From positions 137,276,167 through 137,340,166 of the forward strand of contig NC_068982.1 in the NCBI RefSeq assembly GCF_001194135.2: DNA of 64,000 bases, read 5' to 3'. The notes beneath the pieces were generated by a model, which saw nothing but the letters and a program-made list of their open reading frames with translations, had not been told where the DNA came from and made no database searches. Made by a program: the position numbers and the translations under genes. The stretch is from Octopus bimaculoides (Eukaryota). Positions 5,552 to 63,990 of this stretch are shown in pieces (positions within the stretch are counted from its first letter, which is position 1; each line of letters opens with the position of its first letter).

Positions 5552-5685
5552 GAAATTCATTAATTAAATGTGGCCAAACACATATGCAAATTGGAAATGC
5601 TGAAAAGGAATTTGTACAAACATCCTGCAATAATTTTCTTTCTCCATTGAAAAATTTCCTTGAAGGCGACATGAGAACAATTACA
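5552..5685 (+). CDS. SH3GLB1: Endophilin-B N-BAR exon (G)NSLIKCGQTHMQIGNAEKEFVQTSCNNFLSPLKNFLEGDMRTIT
   Basis: Acceptor ttgtcttgcag and donor gtaagt; 134 nt, phase 1 to 0. Peptide matches endophilin B1 GNALIKCGETQKRIGTADRELIQTSALNFLTPLRNFIEGDYKTIA. Confidence 0.95.
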
Positions 5686-7925: not shown

Positions 7926-8018
7926 AAAGAAAAGAAAGTTTTGGAAACCAAGCGTTTGGATCTTGATGCTTGCAAGAGCCGTGTAAGGAAGGCTAAAAGC
8001 CAGGCTGGCCAGCAACAG
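7926..8018 (+). CDS. SH3GLB1: Endophilin-B exon KEKKVLETKRLDLDACKSRVRKAKSQAGQQQ
   Basis: Acceptor tttttgtag and donor gtaata; 93 nt, phase 0-0. Matches KERKLLQNKRLDLDAAKTRLKKAK. Confidence 0.95.
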
Positions 8019-8131
8019 GTAATACTTATGCTACAATTTCCCTTTCTCATTTTTATCTCTTGAATGTTTTGAAGTGTCATATATATATATATATATAATA
8101 ATGATAATAATAATTTCTTAAGTATTGAGAA

Positions 8132-17082: not shown

Positions 17083-18048
17083 NNNNNNNNNNNNNNNNNN
17101 NNNNNNNNNNNNNNNNNNNNNNNNNNNNNNNNNNNNNNNNNNNNNNNNNNNNNNNNNNNNNNNNNNNNNNNNNNNNNNNNNNNNNNNNNNNNNNNNNNNN
17201 NNNNNNNNNNNNNNNNNNNNNNNNNNNNNNNNNNNNNNNNNNNNNNNNNNNNNNNNNNNNNNNNNNNNNNNNNNNNNNNNNNNNNNNNNNNNNNNNNNNN
17301 NNNNNNNNNNNNNNNNNNNNNNNNNNNNNNNNNNNNNNNNNNNNNNNNNNNNNNNNNNNNNNNNNNNNNNNNNNNNNNNNNNNNNNNNNNNNNNNNNNNN
17401 NNNNNNNNNNNNNNNNNNNNNNNNNNNNNNNNNNNNNNNNNNNNNNNNNNNNNNNNNNNNNNNNNNNNNNNNNNNNNNNNNNNNNNNNNNNNNNNNNNNN
17501 NNNNNNNNNNNNNNNNNNNNNNNNNNNNNNNNNNNNNNNNNNNNNNNNNNNNNNNNNNNNNNNNNNNNNNNNNNNNNNNNNNNNNNNNNNNTTTTTTTTT
17601 TTTTTTTCTGTACTTGCTTTTATATAAAACTTACATGAAAGAGATGCTAGCTTGCATGGACAGCCAATGATCTTGGTTAGTTTTTTTTGACAGAAATCAA
17701 CAACAATAACAGCAAAATGTTCAATCGAAAACTGAGGTGTTGCTCTCTGTCAGCTGGTGACTGATCATACAATTTATGTACACACACACTTTCAGAACTA
17801 GTATTTATTAGATAATCATCATTTATATATTTTCCTTTTAATATTTCTTTTATGTTAAATTATAGTATTACAGTTTGTAGAGAGTATTGTAACATATTTT
17901 GTCACCATCAATATTTTTTCCTTTCCATTTTTTTTCTTTTTTTTTTTTCTGTAAATAACCAGTCTGGAATTTATTTATCAAACTAATTACACAAGATTTG
18001 TTGCCATCAGTTTTCCGTTTCACGTACTTGAATATCACTATATTTTAG

Positions 18049-20534: not shown

Positions 20535-20960
20535 CGTGATGGCACCTGTACTAGTGGAGCACTAAGAGCACCGTCCGAGCGTGATCATTGCCAGAGCAGC
20601 TCTCTGGCTTCCATGCCAGTGGCACGTAAATAGCCCCATTTGAGCTTGATCGTTACCAGCGTCACCTTACTGGCACTTGTGCCGGTGGCATGTGAAAAAA
20701 TATTCAAGCAAGGTCATTGCCAGTACCGCTGGACTGGCTCCTGTGCAGGTGGCACGTAAAATACACCATTTTGAGCGTGGCTGTTGCCAGTACCGCCTGA
20801 CTGGCCCTCGTGCCGGTGGCACGTAAAAGTACCCACTACACTCTCGGAGTGGTTGGCGTTAGGAAGGGCATCCAGCTTTAGAAACTCTGCCAAATCAGAT
20901 TGGAGCCTGGTGTAGCCATCTGGTTTGACCAGTCCTCAGTCAAATCATCCAACCCATGCT
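20535..20960 (+). mobile_element. RTE-tailed element, 5 ordered subunits
   Basis: Colinear with the copies at 27728 and 48180. Confidence 0.9.
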
Positions 20961-29900: not shown

Positions 29901-30223
29901 NNNNNNNNNNNNNNNNNNNNNNNNNNNNNNNNNNNNNNNNNNNNNNNNNNNNNNNNNNNNNNNNNNNNNNNNNNNNNNNNNNNNNNNNNNNNNNNNNNNN
30001 NNNNNNNNNNNNNNNNNNNNNNNNNNNNNNNNNNNNNNNNNNNNNNNNNNNNNNNNNNNNNNNNNNNNNNNNNNNNNNNNNNNNNNNNNNNNNNNNNNNN
30101 NNNNNNNNNNNNNNNNNNNNNNNNNNNNNNNNNNNNNNNNNNNNNNNNNNNNNNNNNNNNNNNNNNNNNNNNNNNNNNNNNNNNNNNNNNNNNNNNNNNN
30201 NNNNNNNNNNNNNNNNNNNNNNN

Positions 30224-30268
<45 letters not shown>

Positions 30269-30814
30269 TGCATACACACACACACATATATATATATATA
30301 TACACACATACATATATATATATATTTATACACATACATACATATACATATATCCAGTAATAAGATGACTATCAGATCAAAAGATAACGTAGATTAATTA
30401 TCAAAAATATATTCCATTTTTAAAAATGATGTTGATAGCAAAACAAAAAAAATCTTATAAACATGTAAAAAAATATATTCTTTCTAAAAATGTCTATTAT
30501 TGAAAAGATTTCAGATTAATATCTCTGTCATCTCTTACATTATCATATTCCTCATTGTTAGTTTTTCTGTTTATAAAACTTTAAGATTATCAAAAGCAAT
30601 ACTGCCTTCGATGGTACTTTTAATAACCATGCTTGTGTGAGCCATCTTCAGTTTCATAATTCATATTATTCATTCATATTCTAGAATATCAAAAATGTAC
30701 AACTATATAATCAAAAAAAATATATATAAAATGGGTATATATAAATGTTTATGAATGAAAATATCCTTTCATGCTAATTTGAATTTTCCCTTCTTTTTAT
30801 GCTCTTCTTATCAG

Positions 30815-30832
30815 GATGATGCTGTTGCTAAA
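30815..30832 (+). CDS. SH3GLB1: 18-nt microexon DDAVAK
   Basis: Branch-like tgctaat at 30772, pyrimidine tract, TGC at 30800, cag acceptor and consensus donor AAA/gtaagt; phase 0-0. Position resembles the vertebrate WAEEVTK/WNDEVDK segment that precedes (S/A)EQELR. Confidence 0.7.
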
Positions 30833-31989
30833 GTAAGTTTTAAACAATCTGACAGACCATATGTAAATGGTGATGGTTTTCAATTGGTGTTTGATATTCT
30901 ATAGTCGTTGATGCTACCGTTGTTTATGTTGTTTAAAAGTTGTATTTTTTCTCATATTATTATTTTTTTTCATTATAGTAATTTACATTTGGCTTTATCA
31001 TAACTGTTTAAATTCTTAAGTTATGGGCTATTTCATGAAAATGCATGGCCAATTTTCAATTACTATTCAGTTTCTTTCTGTTTCTTTCTTCTTTCGTTGA
31101 TTTCTAGATTTCAAATATAAAATACTTTTGAAAATGATTACCATTTTTGCTATAAAAAGCACAAAATCAAAAAAAAAAAAAAAAAAAAAAAATCAAATGA
31201 TTTCATTAAATAAACTAATTAACATATTTTTGTAATTATTTATTAGGTTTGAAATGAAATTGACCCTGTAAATAGCTTTCAACAACTGTAGACATTTAAT
31301 TATAAATCTCCTTCATTTATCAAGTTTAGTTTTGTAGTTAAAATTTTCATTTACAAAATCTCTTAACCCTGAAATTTTGTACTTGGAGCCTAACTACTTA
31401 AATTTCTCATCACATTAATCTCTAATAAAATTCCCTTCATAGCATTTCGTGCATTCTAAGCTCAGACCTTCCTTAGGTTGGCTAGAAATAACAATAAAAT
31501 ACTGGGATCATTATAATTTAACCATTCCTTCCTCCCCAAATTTCTTGCTTTGTACTTAAGTTAGAAACAAATATTTTCTTTTTTTTCCTTAATTAAAAAA
31601 CCCGGAATTAAAAGAATGTCTAAACTAAAATTTTATGTTCAAGCCCAAACTAAGTAGCTTGTGATAATCCTCCATAATTTTATATCAACTAATCAAATTA
31701 GCGTATATATGACAAAACTCATGTGCCAGCAAATTTTATTCTAGTACAAATGAAATCACACAAGCTTTGCATTCATTATCTTTTGGTATTCACTATTATT
31801 GTCTGCATGTTCTTTTAAGTTAGGAATTTTTTGTTTTGTTTTGTTTTGTTTTTCTGCTGCAGTCATTTTCATTTAAGTTGGGGATACAGTGCTTGCTTCT
31901 CATTTTTATATTTGGTTTTGAGTCTCAGTAAAATCATTGGTGGTTGGATTTTTCTTCTTTCTATATTTCCCAATCACTATATAATCCTC

Positions 31990-34424: not shown

Positions 34425-34514
34425 GCAGAAGCTGATTTGAGAGTAGCTCAATCTGAATTTGATCGCCAAGTTGAAATTACCAAGCTGTTACTAGAGGGAA
34501 TTAGCAGTACACAT
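34425..34514 (+). CDS. SH3GLB1: Endophilin-B exon AEADLRVAQSEFDRQVEITKLLLEGISSTH
   Basis: Acceptor tttttgcag and donor gtatgt; 90 nt. Near-identical to SEQELRITQSEFDRQAEITRLLLEGISSTH. Confidence 0.97.
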
Positions 34515-36355: not shown

Positions 36356-38471
36356 CAATGCTATTTTCAGTCAGGTGTTGCTCAATTTAATTTTCTTTTT
36401 CTTTCAAGTTTCTTGTATTAAATTATCTTGCTTTACAAAATGGATTTCTAAGTTATCGCTCAACTCGATGAAAACCTTATTAGCTACGGTATGTTAGTTT
36501 TAGTTTGTATTTTCATCTCATTTATTAGAATGCAGCTGGTCCCAAGATTTTTCAGTTTCTTTTTAATCAAATGTATCAGTATTTAATTTGAAGTAAATAT
36601 TGATGCAAGTCTAAAGGTATCCCAAGTTTTAAACTCACCAAACACAACACACTGTAAGCTTTATGGTTGCTGAACTCAACCACTGCCATAGTGCAGAAGC
36701 CTTAAAACATTGATTAAAATATATTTATACTTTGAATATGTTTACATCTCCCCAGCTAATTTCTATAGTCCATATGCTGTATACTGCTTCCTCTTTTTGT
36801 GTGTGTGTGTGTGTTTTTTTTTTCTCCATGAAAATTGTTGATGTGATGTTTTAACATTTCTCAATTCTGTCATTGCCAGAAATAATTTTACGGGTAGCGG
36901 GTAAAGAGATTCCAGATTCACTTGAAGTAGAATGGGTCTCATCAGTTTTAGAGTTGGGTGGCCCATTTAGGATGGTTAATATCATTCAGAACGCCTGCAG
37001 TGATAATTTTTATACACCTTTTCAGAACCATCCAATATGAAGAAATTAAATAGTTGTAAGTCAAATAGGAAAAGAAAATATATTCCTTTAGATATAATTG
37101 AAATTAGTTTCATTCTCTGCACCTTATCACTTGTTTATGTTCATATGGAGGTATTCAGACATATACATTTACACAAACATTTTTCACTACCATTCCTTAA
37201 CAGCTGTCACTTCTTTTCTTTCAATTGTCATATTTTTTTTTTTTTGAAGACCTTATGTGCATTTGTGCAAGCTCACACTCATATGTGTAAGAGTGTGTAT
37301 GTGGATGTGTCTGTCTGTTTTAAATACTCCATCTTTACACACCACTGTCTGTACATCAATCAACTCCCTTTGGCTAAAATCTCACAAAAATGAAAGTACC
37401 CCTCGCATATTCAGAAGTCACTTTCAATGAAATATATTTAAAACATATTGTCTGTAGTGTGTAAATAAATAATCATTGCTGTTAATTTATGATAATTTAG
37501 GAATCTGGAAGTAAAGTTCAGGTATGTATTGCCTTAGTTGGAGAAACCCCACTGTTCAGTTTAGGTAGATCAAAAGATTACAGATCTACTCTGTGTCTGC
37601 TTTGTCATGCTTTAGTGACACTTTTATTGCCTGTTTGCCATAAAGTAACTTTTTTTTTTTCATTTATATTTATTTTATCAGTTTCTTCGCCCCATCTATG
37701 TCTTAGAAGTTAAAAAAAAAAACATTGTGTTCCTTGTTCACTTGCCTTTTGTTGTTTGCTGTCTGTTGGTGCTGCCAACTTTAATTAGTATAGTGCAATT
37801 TACATTTAATATAATTCAGTTGTCACTTATTTTTTTTTAATTCTTGAGTAAATAAGCAACTCTTTAGGAAGTAACTTCTTATTTTGTTCTATAACATGTT
37901 TTTCTTATTTACCCTGGCACAAACTGAATGCAATGGGCCTACATCTTATGGTTTAGTTTACCATTGTAGATACCTGTGTTTTTTTGTTTTGGGGAGTTTT
38001 TTTCCGATATCTTTCTTATGTGTGTGTGTGTGTATTTAAATATGTATGTATATATATATATAATCAATCAATTCACTTTGATTCTTAATTTTTATGCACT
38101 GATCACTTGAGTTAGTTAGCTGTCATTAACATTTTCTCTCACCACAATAAACACAGAATTCTTGTTATGATTCAGTTTTCTTTTTTCATGTTTAAAATGA
38201 ATATTTATTTTCTTGATCTCACTGAATCAGATGTATATTTGTTGTCTAAATAATGTATCCAGCAATTTGGGTTATTTGCTTTGGGCTTTTTTTTTTTTTT
38301 TTCTATCTCCCCTAATACAAAATCTTTTAAAATTCGTTTGTGACTACTCTTAATGCTGTACTAATGAATTTCCTTAAAAGTTTTACCATCCAAAGAATTA
38401 GTGTTGTTATGAACACAATCAACCTGGTTTCTTTTGCTTCTTTGTACTTTTCTGTATCTTAGGTATATTTC

Positions 38472-52490: not shown

Positions 52491-52591
52491 GCCCATCATC
52501 TGCGCTGCATAAATGACTTCATTGAAGCTGAGATGAATTATTATGCTCAGTGTCATCAATATATGCTAGACCTACGCAAGCAGTTGGGCGG
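52491..52591 (+). CDS. SH3GLB1: Endophilin-B exon AHHLRCINDFIEAEMNYYAQCHQYMLDLRKQLG(G), end of the BAR domain
   Basis: Acceptor ttttttccag and donor gtaagg; 101 nt, ends in phase 2. Matches AHHLRCLNDFVEAQMTYYAQCYQYMLDLQKQLG. Confidence 0.97.
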
Positions 52592-54338: not shown

Positions 54339-56984
54339 TTACATGATTTTGTTTAGATTTGTTTTTAAATTGTTTATCATATTTCTCATGAGAAATATGC
54401 ATTATACATGGAATTTGCAAGCATAACTGAAATGCAAACACACACATGCACACGCAGTCTTTGCAGCCCTTCTTCTTTAAGATTCAGCAATTCAATGCTA
54501 CATGTATTCCATGTGTGATCATTTCCAGTTTATCAATATGATCAGAAAATATAGGAAATCAGAACACAAAATTCTATGTTAGCCTTGCTTGAACTAAAAG
54601 ATTTTAACATTTAAAAAAAAAAAAACATTTATATGAAACAATGTGTTTAATGTGTTTATAAATGACTGTTTATATATTTGATAATATTCTCATCTTTCTA
54701 TTTGTATATATCCCTGCAACTTAGAAAATGTTCTACTTAACATTAAACTATTTTGATTTTTTTTTTTTTGTTTTCCTTTTAATATTCTAGGCCTTCTTAA
54801 TACATCTGTTCATCTAGCCTGATCTCTTAAGCTGATTTGTCTCTCCCTATTTTTTAAAATCTATTTGTTGTCTATTCAATATGTATCCCCCCACCACCAC
54901 CCCACTTTTTCTATTCGTTTATAATGCACTGCTCATTAATAGATCTCAACAGTATTGATTTCTGTCACCCTGCCCTGAACCCATTTGTAAATGTTTTGTA
55001 TACTGTTGCTATGTTCCACCTGTTATTGACATTGACTTCAATATGCTCCTTTGAATAACTTCCCTTCAAATGTCTCTGATTAGAATTGTTCTGTAATCAA
55101 CTTTTTCATCTCTGATAAACATATTCTTCATTTTTTTTTTTTTTTTTTTTTTTTCATACCATGAGCAACATTTTAAGACTAAAGCTATCGATTCATTTCA
55201 CTACTTTGGAGCATAGTAGTTTAACTAACGCATAAATAAGGTACCCAGAGTCTTGATTCTTGTAACACAAGTTAATACCCCAGAATACTTTAATTTTTGT
55301 CTCTAGAAAAATACAATACAATTAACATTACTTATGTAACCTTAGGATTAATTAAGAAATTATTATTAGTATTATTGTTATTATTAAATGAAATTATCAA
55401 ATTATCAATATTAGCATAATTAAAAGAAATTATCATTATTATATTACAAAGTCATAAAAAATTCTTGGCTTTGTAGCTCCTTCTAATTAATTTAAGGCCA
55501 AGGAATGATTTCCATAAGTCTTTAACATGAATATTTCAATTATATATTTTTTCTTTTTCGCTTTGTTTCCATTGATCTTTACCATTACTTTTTCAGCAGG
55601 CTACTTTCAAATAATTTCTGTAATAATTTCCTAATTTGTGGAAAATGGTTTAAGAATTATTAAAAAAAAAAAAAACTAATTACAAATGATAATGATAACA
55701 ATAATAATAATAATAATTTTTACATGATATATTTATTATGCAGACATGAACATCTTGTATTATTTGACTACTATTATTATTATTGTTGTTGTTGTTGTTT
55801 CATAATTTAGCTCTTTTGTGTCTCTCCTTAAAAAAAATTTTAAAAAAACATGTCATAAAGTTCTCCAAATGTTACTTGATTTGCTACCACTCTACTGAAG
55901 CCCCCCTACCCTTTCCTGTTGCAGTATACCTGCTGATAACTGATTGCAGGACCATCATGTAAGATGTAGCATATTTTTCGGCCTACTATGGTATGCTATG
56001 TATATCCATTTAAAGATTATCTCAGTCTGTTACTCCCTGAGTTTCTTAGCTAAACCCTTTTCATCGCTATCACTAATTATCATTTCTGCTTGTACTTTTT
56101 GCTTCAGGTGGGAATGCACATTTTATTTCTTGTAATTCATGTTTTCTTTTCTCCTTTCTTTCTTTTTTAACAATATGATATTTTATTACTGTTTAAGTTT
56201 TGGTTTTGGGTTTTTTATTTTTCCCTAATTAAAACTCAATTCTCGCCCTTCTTCCCCTCCCTTTTAGCATGCTTCCAATCCAATATAGTATGCAGTAGAT
56301 ATATAAGGATCCTTCTTTTCATCTAGTAATAAGTTGAGGCTAAGCTTATAGAAATAAGTAAAAAATCAGCAACGTTTGATTTTTCCTTCCTCATTATTTT
56401 TTAGTTTTCCTTCCATTTAGCTATTTCTAATTAACATACGGTGAAAAAAAGGACTTCCTGTTGATAGAAATTATATTGTTGGTTCCATAGAAGCTTTAAA
56501 TTTATTTATCTTTCATCAGTTGTTCGTGTTTAGTATCTGATTTTCTTATTTTCTTATTTAGTTAAATTACAGAAGCATTCAGAGTTTTATCTTACGTTAC
56601 TATTTTTTCTTTTATTCTGTCATTATTTCTACCTTGTGACTTTTCAGTAGAAAAGATATTCTCTAGCTTGCTGTTTTAGATGTTGTACCTTAGCTCCATG
56701 TACTAAGTTTCGTATTTGTGTACAATTTAGTTTTATTCAGAGCTAGTTTAGACCGTTGCATTTTTTTTCTTCGTCTGTTTTTTGGGATTTGTCTTCTGTT
56801 CAAAAGAAAATAATGAATTATTATTTTCTCTGTTTATTTTCTTAATATTTATAACATGTAACTAACAAATTGTTTCATGCAAATTCAATTGAATCATGTG
56901 TATGTATATGTAAATATGTATTTATGTGTAGCCGAGTCAAGTACATCGATATCAGCAATATCAAAATTAGATCAATGGAAATTG

Positions 56985-57710: not shown

Positions 57711-58204
57711 ACACATATGAATAACAATCTAAGAATCCATGACTCAGAAAAAAATTTGCTCATATATTCGTCAATGGAGTGGGGTATATTAATCAAAGTT
57801 TGCAGTATTATAGATCTCTTAAAGCTGGCCTTACCAATCAGTTTCACACTGGGTATTAAAACCAGCCATTAGATAACTGCATAGTTAATACCATGTGCTC
57901 TTCAGAGTTGGTAGAGCTGTCACTGTATTTATATAATATTTATATAGTAATATGTATAATACGTGAAACAGTCAGCAAGTAAGAGTTGATGTTAATGCAA
58001 AGAAACATTATTTATTATTTTTACTTGATAGTGAGTTTCAAAAGTGACCCAAAGGCTGAGAGTTTCATGCGTGACACTTACCATAAATGGAACCCTGAGT
58101 CTGTGAGTCACTTTCAAAACTTTCTGCCAAGTAAAAGTAATAAAAGTATATATGCTCATATGTTTAACCTCTCTCCATTTTTAATTAGTGCTCAGGTGTA
58201 CTAC

Positions 58205-58511
58205 ATGTGTATACATGTTTTTATATATGTATGTATATGTGTAAATGCCTGTGTATGTATATGTTATACATGTACATGTATGCATGTGTATGTATATGGT
58301 ATATGTGTGTATATATGGTATATGTGTGTATATATGGTATATGTGTGTATATATGGTATATGTGTGTATGTGGTATATGTGTGTATGTGGTATATGTGTG
58401 TATGTGGTATATGTGTGTATGTGGTATATGTGTGTATGTGGTATGTGTGTATAGAGATGTATATACATGTAGATGTATATATGTATATATATATATATAT
58501 CTGTATATATG

Positions 58512-58544
<33 letters not shown>

Positions 58545-58634
58545 GTGTATATATGTGTATATATGTGTATATCTGTGTATATCTGTGTATATCTGTGTAT
58601 ATATGTGTATATCTGTGCATATGTGTAGATATCT

Positions 58635-58677
<43 letters not shown>

Positions 58678-59000
58678 TGTGTCTATATAGATGTATATAT
58701 GTGTGTGCGTTTATATGTATGTGTGCATGTATCATCATCATGACCACCTAATGTCTATTTTCCATGCTTGCATGGGTTGGATGGTTGGACAAGAACCAAT
58801 GAGCTACAGTACTCCACCAGTGTCTGAATATATATATGTTTGTGTGTGTGTATGTATGTATGTTTGTATGTATGTATGTATACATATTTGTGTATGTATA
58901 TATGCATGTATTTGTGTGTATACATGTGTATGTATATATGTCCATATATGCATGTATATGTGTGTATGTGTATATATGTATGTATATATGTATATAAAAT
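58205..59000. repeat. Compound TA/TG low-complexity tract with 19-, 17- and 10-bp minisatellite units
   Basis: atatgtgtgtatatatggt about x3, atatgtgtgtatgtggt about x5, then gtgtatatct units. Confidence 0.9.
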
Positions 59001-63668: not shown

Positions 63669-63710
63669 TGAGTTCTATTTTTCCAGTTTGCATCAAAATA
63701 CCTGCATATA

Positions 63711-63990
63711 TGTATGTATGCATGTGTGTATGTATGTATGCATGTGTGTATGTATGTATGTATGCGTGTATGTATGTATGCATGTGTGTATGTATGCATG
63801 TGTGTATGTATGTATGCATGTGTGTATGTATGTATGCATGCATGTGTGTATGTATGTATGCATGCATGTGTGTATGTATGTATGCATGTGTGTATGTATG
63901 TATGCATGCATGTGTGTATGTATGTATGCATGTGTGTATGTGTATGTATGCAGATATGTATGTGTATATATATATATATACATATACATA
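63711..63990 (+). repeat. (TATG)n(CATG)TG minisatellite rich in TGCATG
   Basis: About 13 TGCATG hexamers counted by eye. Confidence 0.9.

What the first reader, a model, noticed from the sequence alone, without database searches (positions are those of the whole stretch)
30772..31047. 18-nt microexon (DDAVAK) with neural-microexon signatures in the endophilin-B BAR tip loop
Seen: an isolated 18-nt exon with branch-like tgctaat, a pyrimidine tract, TGC 12-14 nt upstream of the exon start, a consensus gtaagt donor and TGCATG 210 nt downstream (31042). Established: a UGC near the 3' splice site is the SRRM3/4 (eMIC) motif, a downstream UGCAUG is an Rbfox enhancer, and vertebrate endophilin B1 has neuron-specific inserts at this same junction. 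Inference: a neural-regulated cephalopod microexon that lengthens BAR helix 3 and is easily missed by annotation.
Basis: partly seen in the sequence, partly recalled or inferred. Interest (0 to 1): 0.7.

Follow-up and report, generated by a model that had tools for sequence, protein, structure and literature searches.

The report
Conserved octopus endophilin-B tip microexon
The 18-base stretch is a genuine, already annotated alternative mini-exon of the octopus endophilin-B gene that is conserved across molluscs. It sits where fly and mammalian orthologues carry neuron-specific mini-exons, but its neural regulation in octopus has not been tested.

Summary
Window 30815-30832 (GATGATGCTGTTGCTAAA, DDAVAK) is an AG/GTAAGT-flanked, phase-0 18-nt exon. 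It lies between endophilin-B exons 7926-8018 and 34425-34514.

- **Not a chance decoy.** It is the only one of 754 in-frame AG..GT candidates in the 26-kb intron with comparable splice signals.
- **Already annotated.** Its peptide is in current RefSeq O. bimaculoides isoforms X1 and X3 and is skipped in X2 and X4. It is also in O. sinensis and O. vulgaris isoforms, so annotation did not miss it.
- **Conserved.** DD(A/V)(V/I)A(K/R) variants occur in annotated isoforms from bivalves, gastropods and a chiton, and in a probable annelid transcript. A spliced oyster mRNA contig carries the exon.
- **Same junction as known neural exons.** These are the eMIC/SRRM4-dependent 24-nt mouse Sh3glb1 exon (xWAEEVTK) and the fly EndoB exon.
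- **Regulatory motifs.** A UGC 10-15 nt upstream is kept in all four mollusc genomes examined (joint chance about 6e-4). A downstream UGCAUG is kept in three of four (p about 0.01). The octopus UGCAUG at +210 alone is weak (8-18% by chance).
- **Structure.** AlphaFold models place DDAVAK in the helix 2/helix 3 hairpin at the distal BAR tip.

Neural specificity is plausible but could not be tested here. It is a new member of a known kind, of moderate interest.

The parts
5552..5685 (+). Constitutive endophilin-B exon (BAR helix 2, GNSLIKCGQ...MRTIT)
   Evidence: tblastn and reading of splice sites; identical to O. bimaculoides RefSeq protein
7926..8018 (+). Constitutive exon upstream of the microexon (KEKKVLETKRLDLDACKSRVRKAKSQAGQQQ); donor CAG|gtaata, phase 0
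30772..30778 (+). Branch-point-like tgCTAAT (CUAAY), about 38 nt upstream of the exon, inside a 130-nt AG-exclusion zone
   Evidence: Sequence; AG-exclusion zone measured. A strong CUAAY branch point plus a long AG-exclusion zone is described for eMIC exons in PMC8797185. Branch-point use is inferred.
30785..30814 (+). Pyrimidine tract and 3' splice site (ttttcccttctttttatgctcttcttatcag), with UGC at 30800-30802 (-15..-13)
   Evidence: A UGC at -10 to -15 is also present at the orthologous exon in oyster, ark clam and Aplysia.
30815..30832 (+). 18-nt cassette microexon GATGATGCTGTTGCTAAA = DDAVAK
   Evidence: Exact peptide at this junction in RefSeq O. bimaculoides X1/X3, skipped in X2/X4. Unique best candidate in the intron. 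Conserved across Mollusca.
30833..30838 (+). Consensus 5' splice site gtaagt
   Evidence: gtaag is also the donor of the oyster, ark clam and Aplysia orthologous exons
31042..31047 (+). TGCATG (Rbfox-type hexamer), 210 nt downstream of the exon
   Evidence: Present. Chance expectation is 8-18%. Counterparts lie at +16/+100 in oyster and +56 in ark clam, with none in Aplysia. Function is inferred.
34425..34514 (+). Constitutive exon downstream of the microexon (AEADLRVAQSEFDRQVEITKLLLEGISSTH), phase 0 at both ends
37501..37521 (+). Second cassette microexon, 21 nt, GAATCTGGAAGTAAAGTTCAG = ESGSKVQ (ag|...|gtatgt)
   Evidence: in RefSeq X1/X2 of O. bimaculoides and in O. sinensis/vulgaris isoforms
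52491..52591 (+). Constitutive exon (AHHLRCINDF...RKQLGG), end of the BAR domain
55925..55943 (+). Coding part of an alternative terminal exon ((G)IPADN, stop) that gives a BAR-only isoform
   Evidence: matches the old RefSeq isoform X5 (P0091) and the Sepia pharaonis model ending SIPADN

Best explanation
Window 30815-30832 is a genuine, frame-preserving 18-nt cassette microexon of the octopus endophilin-B gene, the SH3GLB1/Bif-1/EndoB orthologue. The sequence matches Octopus bimaculoides.

**Shown**
- It is spliced between exons 7926-8018 and 34425-34514.
- It is included in some annotated isoforms and skipped in others.
- It encodes DDAVAK.
- It is conserved at the protein level, with synonymous codon changes, across bivalves, gastropods, a chiton and cephalopods, and in a probable annelid.
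- It occupies the junction where mouse Sh3glb1 carries eMIC-dependent 39-nt and 24-nt exons and fly EndoB a 36-nt eMIC-dependent exon.

**Modelled**
- The six residues enter the helix 2/helix 3 hairpin at the distal tip of the BAR arm and push the turn outwards by about three residues.

**Inferred mechanism**
- The exon is too short for normal exon definition.
- It has a consensus GUAAGU donor, a long AG-exclusion zone with a distal CUAAU branch point, and a UGC 13-15 nt upstream of the AG.
- In neurons the eMIC-containing isoform of Srrm234 would bind that UGC region and promote 3' splice-site recognition.
- Rbfox at the downstream UGCAUG may assist.
- Neurons would then make an endophilin-B with an altered BAR tip, in parallel with vertebrate Bif-1b/c.

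Confidence that it is a real, conserved alternative microexon is about 0.97. Confidence that it is neural-enriched and eMIC-dependent is about 0.55-0.6. The overall confidence below refers to the full statement.
For: **Sequence and splice signals**
- Coordinates and splice signals were read directly.
- It is the unique best of 754 candidates in the intron.

**Annotation**
- RefSeq O. bimaculoides X1/X3 contain QQQ|DDAVAK|AEADL and X2/X4 skip it.
- O. sinensis X1, X2, X4-X6 and X9, and O. vulgaris X1 and X4, include it.

**Conservation**
- Variants in annotated isoforms: DDAVAR in oysters and Mytilus; DDAVSR in Ostrea; DDVIAR in scallop; DDVIAK in Mercenaria and Haliotis; DDVVAK in Gigantopelta; DDAVAK in Patella; DDVAK in Aplysia; DDIAK in Biomphalaria; DDLAK in Physella; DTDAVAK in a chiton.
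- DEDVIAK occurs in a metatranscriptome contig whose protein is closest to the leech Helobdella.
- The Logan contig L001 aligns at 100% identity to the M. gigas locus as a spliced mRNA that carries the 18-nt exon.

**Genomic motifs**
- UGC lies at -15, -12, -10 and -15 in octopus, Tegillarca, M. gigas and Aplysia, against a background of 13-19% per locus.
- AG-exclusion zones are 130, 44, 54 and 64 nt.
- UGCAUG lies downstream at +210, +56 and +16/+100, with none in Aplysia.

**Vertebrates and literature**
- Vertebrate isoforms carry [I/V/M]WAEEVTK immediately before the same constitutive exon.
- SRRM4 drives the neural isoforms Bif-1b/c (PMC6013970).
- Mouse Sh3glb1 24-nt and 39-nt exons and the fly EndoB 36-nt exon are listed as eMIC-dependent. 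EndoB is one of only four exons shared in position between fly and mouse (PMC8797185).
- UGC motifs near the 3' splice site are the SRRM3/4 signal (PMC10551640).

**Structure**
- AlphaFold2 with and without the exon; PDB mapping to human endophilin-B1 6UP6.
Against: - No octopus RNA-seq, tissue PSI or junction reads could be examined, so neural enrichment is inferred only.
- RefSeq isoform models show that inclusion and skipping both occur, but say nothing about tissue.
- The octopus UGCAUG at +210 is expected by chance in 8-18% of cases, and Aplysia has none within 330 nt.
- UGC near an AG is common: 13-19% within -18..-3.
- A 2026 comparative study that included O. bimaculoides inferred only two bilaterian-ancestral neural exons (APBB, MADD) and does not mention SH3GLB1/EndoB.
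- The four-species motif test was designed after the motif had been seen in octopus.
- The AlphaFold models are monomers with pLDDT of about 78-82 at the tip.
Confidence: 0.58

Rival explanations
1. It is a real alternative microexon, but it is not neuron-specific. Inclusion would be broad, stochastic, or enriched in another tissue such as secretory or endocrine-like cells. Control would come from general splice-site strength or from factors other than eMIC and Rbfox.
For: - Inclusion and skipping combine freely with the other cassettes in the RefSeq isoforms, with no tissue information.
- The oyster transcript that carries the exon comes from a run of unknown tissue.
- The 3' splice site is not weak: 85% pyrimidines and C at -3. 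The donor is consensus, so the exon might be recognised without a neural enhancer.
- In mammals the SH3GLB1 microexon is also used in pancreatic islets under SRRM3 (bioRxiv 10.1101/2022.04.02.486809).
- Motif evidence in octopus alone is weak.
Against: - The UGC at -10 to -15 is conserved in four molluscs (joint chance about 6e-4), together with long AG-exclusion zones.
- Exons at the same junction in both fly and mouse are eMIC-dependent.
- An 18-nt exon normally needs a dedicated enhancer. This is established knowledge, reviewed in PMC10551640.
Confidence: 0.33
2. It is effectively a constitutive exon. The annotated skipping isoforms would be artefacts of model building.
For: The exon has good splice signals and is deeply conserved.
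Against: - Skipping isoforms are annotated independently in three Octopus species, in Argonauta, in Sepia and in most other molluscs.
- The probable annelid has separate include and skip transcripts, P0008 and P0092.
- Many mollusc gene models lack the exon entirely.
Confidence: 0.05
3. It is a chance AG...GT open stretch in a long AT-rich intron, a decoy that is never spliced.
For: The intron holds 754 in-frame AG..GT candidates. The flanking motifs are individually common.
Against: - The exact peptide is present at exactly this junction in RefSeq isoforms of the same species and two congeners.
- The peptide is conserved across mollusc classes with synonymous codon differences.
- A spliced oyster mRNA carries the orthologous exon.
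Confidence: 0.01

Closest known systems
Vertebrate SH3GLB1 (Bif-1/endophilin B1) neural exons: the 24-nt microexon (mouse MmuEX0042195, peptide xWAEEVTK; 'exon 7' of Bif-1b/c) and the 39-nt upstream cassette
   Same: - Same gene family and the same phase-0 junction, seven residues after the conserved KAK and directly before the [A/S]E(A/Q)(D/E)LR exon.
- It is likewise the last cassette before that constitutive exon, and is preceded in O. sinensis, O. vulgaris and oysters by further cassettes.
- The peptide logic is similar: acidic-acidic-(x)-V-(A/T)-K (EEVTK against DDVAK or DDAVAK).
- There is a UGC upstream of the 3' splice site. SRRM4 is recruited there in human (PMC6013970).
   Different: - 18 nt against 24 nt, and no tryptophan.
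- Peptide similarity over 5-6 residues cannot prove homology.
- Neural specificity and SRRM dependence are demonstrated in mammals (PMC6013970, PMC8797185, PMC13387927) but untested in octopus.
Drosophila EndoB eMIC-dependent exon (DmeEX0004286, 36 nt)
   Same: - Same junction in the orthologous gene. Insect isoforms insert 11-13 residues between ...GQP(x) and AERDL.
- It is eMIC-dependent and neural, and is the only fly-mouse shared eMIC exon found in all the insects studied (PMC8797185).
- The described cis features (UGC near the 3' splice site, long AG-exclusion zone, CUAAY branch point) are all present at the octopus exon.
   Different: - It is twice as long. Its peptide (...SPEVALEQ type) resembles the upstream mollusc cassette (PDPYMNPVLVE, ...NVLMMVE) more than DDAVAK.
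- It may therefore be orthologous to a different member of the cassette cluster.
- Fly eMIC exons have very weak 3' splice sites, whereas the octopus tract is pyrimidine-rich.
Annotated mollusc endophilin-B DD(A/V)(V/I)A(K/R) microexon (for example Magallana gigas, Patella vulgata, Haliotis, Aplysia RefSeq isoforms)
   Same: Same exon: same position, 15-21 nt, near-identical peptide, gtaag donor and a UGC 10-15 nt upstream. Patella encodes the identical DDAVAK.
   Different: - Only species-level differences: K/R at the last codon, and 15 nt in heterobranch gastropods.
- The octopus intron is far longer (22.8 kb upstream and 3.6 kb downstream) than in oyster.

Membership tests
Endophilin-B (SH3GLB1/EndoB) gene | Encodes an N-BAR domain of the endophilin-B type | tested here: met
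   Window exons translate to a BAR segment identical to the O. bimaculoides endophilin-B1 RefSeq proteins. Hits carry Pfam PF03114. phmmer of P0218 against the PDB hits human endophilin-B1 6UP6 at E = 1e-128.
Endophilin-B (SH3GLB1/EndoB) gene | C-terminal SH3 domain | tested here: inconclusive
   The SH3 exons and the first ~116 codons lie outside the 64-kb window. The full-length RefSeq proteins that match the window do have SH3. The gene spans 163 kb.
Alternative cassette microexon (3-27 nt, frame-preserving) | Length of 27 nt or less, a multiple of 3, canonical AG/GT, flanked by introns of the same phase | tested here: met
   18 nt, ag|...|gtaagt, with phase-0 junctions on both sides.
Alternative cassette microexon (3-27 nt, frame-preserving) | Both inclusion and skipping isoforms exist | tested here: met
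   RefSeq X1/X3 include it and X2/X4 skip it in O. bimaculoides. The same holds in O. sinensis and O. vulgaris. This evidence is annotation, not reads seen here. The orthologous oyster exon was seen in a spliced transcript contig.
eMIC (Srrm234/SRRM3/SRRM4)-dependent neural microexon programme | UGC motif close upstream of the 3' splice site | tested here: met
   TGC at -15..-13. It is conserved at -12, -10 and -15 in Tegillarca, M. gigas and Aplysia, with a per-locus background of 13-19% and a joint chance of about 6e-4.
eMIC (Srrm234/SRRM3/SRRM4)-dependent neural microexon programme | Long AG-exclusion zone with a distal strong branch point (CUAAY), as described for fly eMIC exons | tested here: met
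   The AG-exclusion zone is 130 nt in octopus and 44-64 nt in the other molluscs. ctaat lies at 30774-30778. The feature list comes from PMC8797185.
eMIC (Srrm234/SRRM3/SRRM4)-dependent neural microexon programme | Positional orthology to a demonstrated eMIC-dependent exon | tested here: met
   It is at the same junction as the mouse Sh3glb1 24-nt and 39-nt exons and the fly EndoB 36-nt exon.
eMIC (Srrm234/SRRM3/SRRM4)-dependent neural microexon programme | Neural-enriched inclusion | not testable with these tools
   No octopus RNA-seq or PSI data were reachable. No octopus transcript contigs covering the junction were found in the protein collection.
eMIC (Srrm234/SRRM3/SRRM4)-dependent neural microexon programme | Loss of inclusion without the eMIC domain, or gain on its expression | not testable with these tools
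   This requires a knock-down or a minigene experiment.
Rbfox-enhanced exon | (U)GCAUG in the downstream intron, typically within about 300 nt, and conserved | tested here: inconclusive
   It is present at +210 in octopus, where chance is 8-18%. It lies at +56 in Tegillarca and at +16 and +100 in M. gigas, and is absent within 330 nt in Aplysia. At least three of four by chance is about 0.01, but the test was post hoc.
Rbfox-enhanced exon | Rbfox binding and dependence | not testable with these tools
   This requires CLIP or perturbation.

The most novel reading that the evidence does not exclude
The octopus DDAVAK exon may be the lophotrochozoan orthologue of the vertebrate SH3GLB1 24-nt neural microexon (xWAEEVTK). 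It would belong to the same ancestral cassette cluster as the fly EndoB eMIC exon. On that reading, an eMIC-controlled microexon at the BAR-domain tip of endophilin-B existed in the last common bilaterian ancestor and has been kept for more than 600 million years in all three bilaterian superclades. It would join the only two such exons so far inferred (APBB, MADD) and would point to a neuron-specific tuning of BAR-tip geometry.
Probability: 0.35. Interest if true: 0.6.

Novelty: new member of a known kind. Interest (0 to 1): 0.35.

Why it matters
Neural microexon programmes are thought to have been almost completely rewired between flies and mammals. EndoB/Sh3glb1 is the one eMIC-dependent exon position for which common ancestry was considered plausible (PMC8797185).

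This work shows a short, strongly conserved exon at the same junction throughout Mollusca, including octopus, and in a probable annelid. It has a conserved UGC element and a peptide that resembles the vertebrate microexon. That supplies the missing third bilaterian superclade and gives a concrete candidate for an ancestral neural microexon.

It also gives a testable link between splicing and membrane-curvature protein geometry, because the insert sits at the BAR tip, the same site as the inserts that distinguish the vertebrate Bif-1b/c isoforms from Bif-1a. PMC6013970 reports opposite effects on apoptosis: Bif-1a is pro-apoptotic and Bif-1b/c are anti-apoptotic.

The exon itself is not a discovery, since it is already in RefSeq models. 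The added value lies in the comparative placement and the regulatory prediction.

Tried and rejected
1. **Cephalopod genomic DNA for intron-flank conservation.** The O. bimaculoides, O. sinensis and Argonauta genes span 163, 194 and 123 kb, so the tool returned no DNA. The smaller isoform products were not on record. All look-ups are now used.
2. **Metagenome scan.** The pattern GAYGAYGCNGTNGCNAARGTAAG gave 15 hits. All sit in GC-rich or prokaryote-like coding context with no AG acceptor, so they are chance matches.
3. **Extra cassettes in the window.** The O. sinensis and O. vulgaris cassettes PDPYMNPVLVE and ELPGIYQ were sought by exact, regex and fuzzy peptide matching and by listing candidates that end in VE, EQ or YQ. 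Nothing convincing turned up. The one 'PVLVE' hit at 20545 lies in a repeat-like element with no splice sites.
4. **The extra Gly in the old RefSeq models (QQQ-G-DDAVAK).** No canonical splice choice in the window yields a GGN codon. This is unexplained and was not pursued.
5. **First protein search.** The 146-aa query returned only proteins of 256 aa or less and hid the full-length isoforms. A 366-aa chimeric probe (Tegillarca N-terminus, window exons and oyster C-terminus) was needed.
6. **Human SH3GLB1 recalled from memory.** It was used only as a tblastn probe to locate exons and is not used as evidence.
7. **Other genes near the exon.** A search for ORFs and tandem repeats on both strands around the exon found only microsatellites and an assembly gap.
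8. **Literature.** No paper in the library describes this cephalopod exon.
Full report
**1. The observation**

- tgctaat lies at 30772-30778.
- The tract ttttcccttctttttatgctcttcttatcag ends in the acceptor AG at 30813-30814, with TGC at 30800-30802.
- The 18-nt exon GATGATGCTGTTGCTAAA (DDAVAK) lies at 30815-30832.
- A consensus gtaagt donor lies at 30833-30838.
- TGCATG lies at 31042-31047.

A tblastn probe and direct reading of splice sites place endophilin-B exons on the + strand at 5552-5685, 7926-8018, 34425-34514 and 52491-52591. The introns on both sides of the candidate are phase 0, so an 18-nt insert keeps the frame. The first ~116 codons and the SH3 exons lie outside the window. The window contains N runs, so it comes from a draft-type assembly, and one gap (29901-30223) lies 600 nt upstream of the exon.

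**2. Is it more than chance?**

The 26,406-nt intron 8019-34424 holds 754 in-frame, stop-free AG..GT candidates of 3-51 nt. Only the reported one combines a donor score of at least 4.2 bits, at least 85% pyrimidines at -23..-4 and a pyrimidine at -3.

The two 'neural' motifs are not individually significant.
- A TGC occurs in the 28 nt upstream of 32% of all AGs in the window.
- A TGCATG within 215-300 nt is expected 13-18% of the time.
- That figure falls to about 8-11% if 18 of the 41 TGCATG copies, which sit in microsatellites at 58.2-59.0 kb and 63.7-64.0 kb, are set aside.

**3. What it is**

Two protein searches and a cluster listing settle the identity.
- The window's exons are 100% identical to Octopus bimaculoides endophilin-B1.
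- Current RefSeq isoforms X1 (XP_052821587.1) and X3 (XP_052821589.1) read ...KAKSQAGQQQ|DDAVAK|AEADLRVAQ..., which is exactly the proposed splice.
- X2 and X4 skip the exon.
- O. sinensis X1, X2, X4, X5, X6 and X9, and O. vulgaris X1 and X4, also include DDAVAK. Other isoforms of those species skip it.

The exon is therefore real, alternative and already annotated. The gene is very long: 163 kb in O. bimaculoides and 194 kb in O. sinensis.

**4. Conservation**

The same junction carries a near-identical mini-exon in annotated isoforms across Mollusca.

| Peptide | Taxa |
|---|---|
| DDAVAR | Crassostrea, Magallana, Saccostrea, Mytilus |
| DDAVSR | Ostrea |
| DDVIAR | Mizuhopecten |
| DDVIAK | Mercenaria, Ruditapes, Haliotis |
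| DDVVAK | Gigantopelta |
| DDAVAK | Patella |
| DDVAK | Aplysia |
| DDIAK | Biomphalaria |
| DDLAK | Physella |
| DTDAVAK | the chiton Liolophura |

- A JGI metatranscriptome contig encodes DEDVIAK at the junction, and a skip form exists from the same organism group. Its protein is closest to the leech Helobdella (68.5% identity), so it is probably from an annelid.
- Logan contig L001 aligns at 100% identity to the M. gigas locus as seven spliced blocks, one of which is the 18-nt exon. This is direct transcript evidence in oyster.
- At the DNA level the exon is GATGATGCTGTTGCTAAA in octopus, GACGATGCAGTGGCTAGA in oyster and GACGATGTGGCCAAA in Aplysia. Most differences fall at third codon positions, as expected for a coding sequence under purifying selection.
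- In the ark clam Tegillarca granosa the deposited gene model lacks the exon. The orthologous intron nevertheless contains ctttctaaag|GACAATGGAGTAGCGAAA|gtaaga (DNGVAK) at L003 28620-28637. So annotation does miss it elsewhere.

**5. Regulatory signals compared across species**

Four genomic loci were compared.

| Locus | Upstream UGC | AG-exclusion zone (nt) | Downstream UGCAUG |
|---|---|---|---|
| Octopus (window) | -15 | 130 | +210 |
| Tegillarca | -12 | 44 | +56 |
| M. gigas | -10 | 54 | +16, +100 and +323 |
| Aplysia | -15, also -24 and -31 | 64 | none within 330 nt |

- Only 13-19% of AGs in each locus have a TGC within -18..-3. The joint chance for all four is therefore about 6e-4.
- The chance of a UGCAUG in at least three of the four loci is roughly 0.01.
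- All four donors begin gtaag.
- These tests were designed after the octopus motifs had been seen, so they are supportive and not decisive.
- The combination of a UGC near the 3' splice site, a long AG-exclusion zone and a CUAAY branch point is the architecture reported for eMIC-dependent exons (PMC8797185; PMC10551640).

**6. Comparison with what is known**

- Vertebrate SH3GLB1 isoforms carry [I/V/M]WAEEVTK directly before the constitutive SEQE(L/V)R exon, at the same position seven residues after KAK. Longer cassettes often lie upstream of it.
- Human Bif-1b and Bif-1c (+21 and +37 aa) are neural-specific and SRRM4-driven. [quoted passage not shown]
- The supplement of PMC8797185 lists mouse Sh3glb1 exons of 24 nt and 39 nt and the fly EndoB 36-nt exon as eMIC-dependent.
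- The main text of that paper says EndoB is one of only four exons shared in position between the fly and mouse programmes. It is the only one of the four found in all the insects examined.
- Insects, a crustacean, nematodes and the brachiopod Lingula also have inserts at this junction.
- The octopus exon is the last cassette before the constitutive exon, as the mouse 24-nt exon is. Its peptide follows the same acidic-acidic-(x)-V-(A/T)-K pattern. This suggests orthology, but six residues cannot prove it.
- The insect exon (...SPEVALEQ) resembles the upstream mollusc cassettes (PDPYMNPVLVE in O. sinensis, ...NVLMMVE in oysters) more than it resembles DDAVAK.
- A 2026 preprint covering 20 bilaterians, O. 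bimaculoides among them, inferred only two ancestral neural exons (APBB, MADD) and does not mention this gene.
- No paper in the searchable library describes the cephalopod exon.

**7. Structure**

AlphaFold2 models were made of O. bimaculoides X3 (with the exon) and X4 (without it), each with a 33-sequence alignment.

| | Helix 2 ends | Loop | Helix 3 begins | Tip pLDDT |
|---|---|---|---|---|
| Without the exon (X4) | K183 | AKS | Q187 | about 90 |
| With the exon (X3) | S186 | QAGQQ | Q192 (DDAVAK = 193-198) | 78-82 |

- The insert therefore lies in the distal-tip hairpin.
- In the models it moves the turn outwards: helix 2 gains 3 residues, the loop 2 and helix 3 gains 1. It does not simply lengthen helix 3.
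- In the alignment to solved human endophilin-B1 (6UP6) the microexon falls in a gap between ...KAKAAETRN and SSEQELR.
- These are monomer predictions. Their effect on dimer or lattice contacts is inference.

**8. Mechanism proposed**

- **Shown:** a conserved, alternatively used, coding 18-nt cassette at the BAR tip.
- **Inferred:**
  - Inclusion needs an intronic enhancer, because 18 nt is too short for exon definition.
  - The conserved UGC 10-15 nt upstream, the long AG-free stretch and the CUAAU branch point fit recognition by the eMIC isoform of Srrm234 in neurons.
  - The consensus GUAAGU donor and, in some species, a nearby UGCAUG (Rbfox) would add to it.
  - I put this neural/eMIC reading at about 0.55-0.6.
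- **Main rival (about 0.33):** the exon is alternative but not neural-specific.
- **Other readings:** constitutive use and a chance decoy are both contradicted by the isoform and conservation data.

**9. Verdict**

The exon is a new, lophotrochozoan member of the known SH3GLB1/EndoB tip-microexon class, and it is already present in RefSeq models.

Interest is moderate. The exon is ordinary as an annotation item. It is nevertheless a good candidate for a third bilaterian-ancestral neural microexon, and public octopus tissue RNA-seq would test that directly.

**10. Dead ends**

- No cephalopod genomic DNA could be obtained, because the genes exceed 100 kb.
- The metagenome pattern scan gave only chance prokaryotic hits.
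- The extra O. sinensis cassettes were not found in the window.
- The extra Gly in the 2015-era RefSeq models (QQQ-G-DDAVAK) cannot be derived from the window sequence.

Noticed in passing
window 37501-37521 (+): A second cassette microexon of 21 nt, GAATCTGGAAGTAAAGTTCAG = ESGSKVQ (ag|...|gtatgt). It is in RefSeq X1/X2 of O. bimaculoides and in O. sinensis and O. vulgaris isoforms. It inserts exactly seven residues in the middle of BAR helix 3, after H228 in the model. It was not seen in any non-octopus mollusc isoform examined. A TGC lies at -24, and there is no GCATG between 37100 and 38000 (about 400 nt upstream and 480 nt downstream).
   Followed up: partly
window 55925-55943 (+): An alternative terminal exon (ttgcag|TATACCTGCTGATAACTGA) completes ...QLGG-IPADN-stop and would give a BAR-only endophilin-B without the SH3 domain. 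It matches the old RefSeq isoform X5, and a Sepia pharaonis model ends SIPADN.
   Followed up: partly
window intron 8019-30814; N gaps 17083-17591 and 29901-30223: O. sinensis and O. vulgaris have two further cassettes at the same junction, upstream of DDAVAK: PDPYMNPVLVE (33 nt) and ELPGIYQ (21 nt). Neither is detectable in this window, and neither is annotated in O. bimaculoides. They may be hidden in assembly gaps, diverged or absent.
   Followed up: partly
window 8010-8025 and 30805-30835: The 2015-era O. bimaculoides RefSeq models (XP_014770726, XP_014770739, XP_014770755) read QQQ-G-DDAVAK, with an extra glycine. No canonical splice choice in the window can produce it. Current models lack it.
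   Followed up: partly
L003 28620-28637 (Tegillarca granosa, GCA_029721355.1 CM056606.1): An unannotated orthologous 18-nt exon, ctttctaaag|GACAATGGAGTAGCGAAA|gtaaga (DNGVAK), with UGC at -12 and UGCAUG at +56. The deposited gene model skips it.
   Followed up: partly
L004 11386-11427, 12896-12922 and 15138-15155 (Magallana gigas): The oyster has three consecutive cassettes at this junction: 42 nt (SSQNSPQNVLMMVE), 27 nt (EENPVRFHL, with UGC at -9) and 18 nt (DDAVAR). They are combined in many RefSeq isoforms. This architecture parallels the mouse 39-nt plus 24-nt exons.
   Followed up: partly
window 63709-63963 and 58196-58996 (+): Microsatellite arrays (periods 20-24 and 4-36) rich in TGCATG hold 18 of the 41 TGCATG copies in the window. 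They inflate any background estimate for Rbfox motifs.
   Followed up: yes
L002 (JGI 3300036412, Ga0393292_001362) 4-498: A metatranscriptome contig encodes a BAR-only endophilin-B with a 7-aa DEDVIAK insert at the junction. Its closest named relative is the leech Helobdella, so the exon probably predates the mollusc-annelid split.
   Followed up: partly
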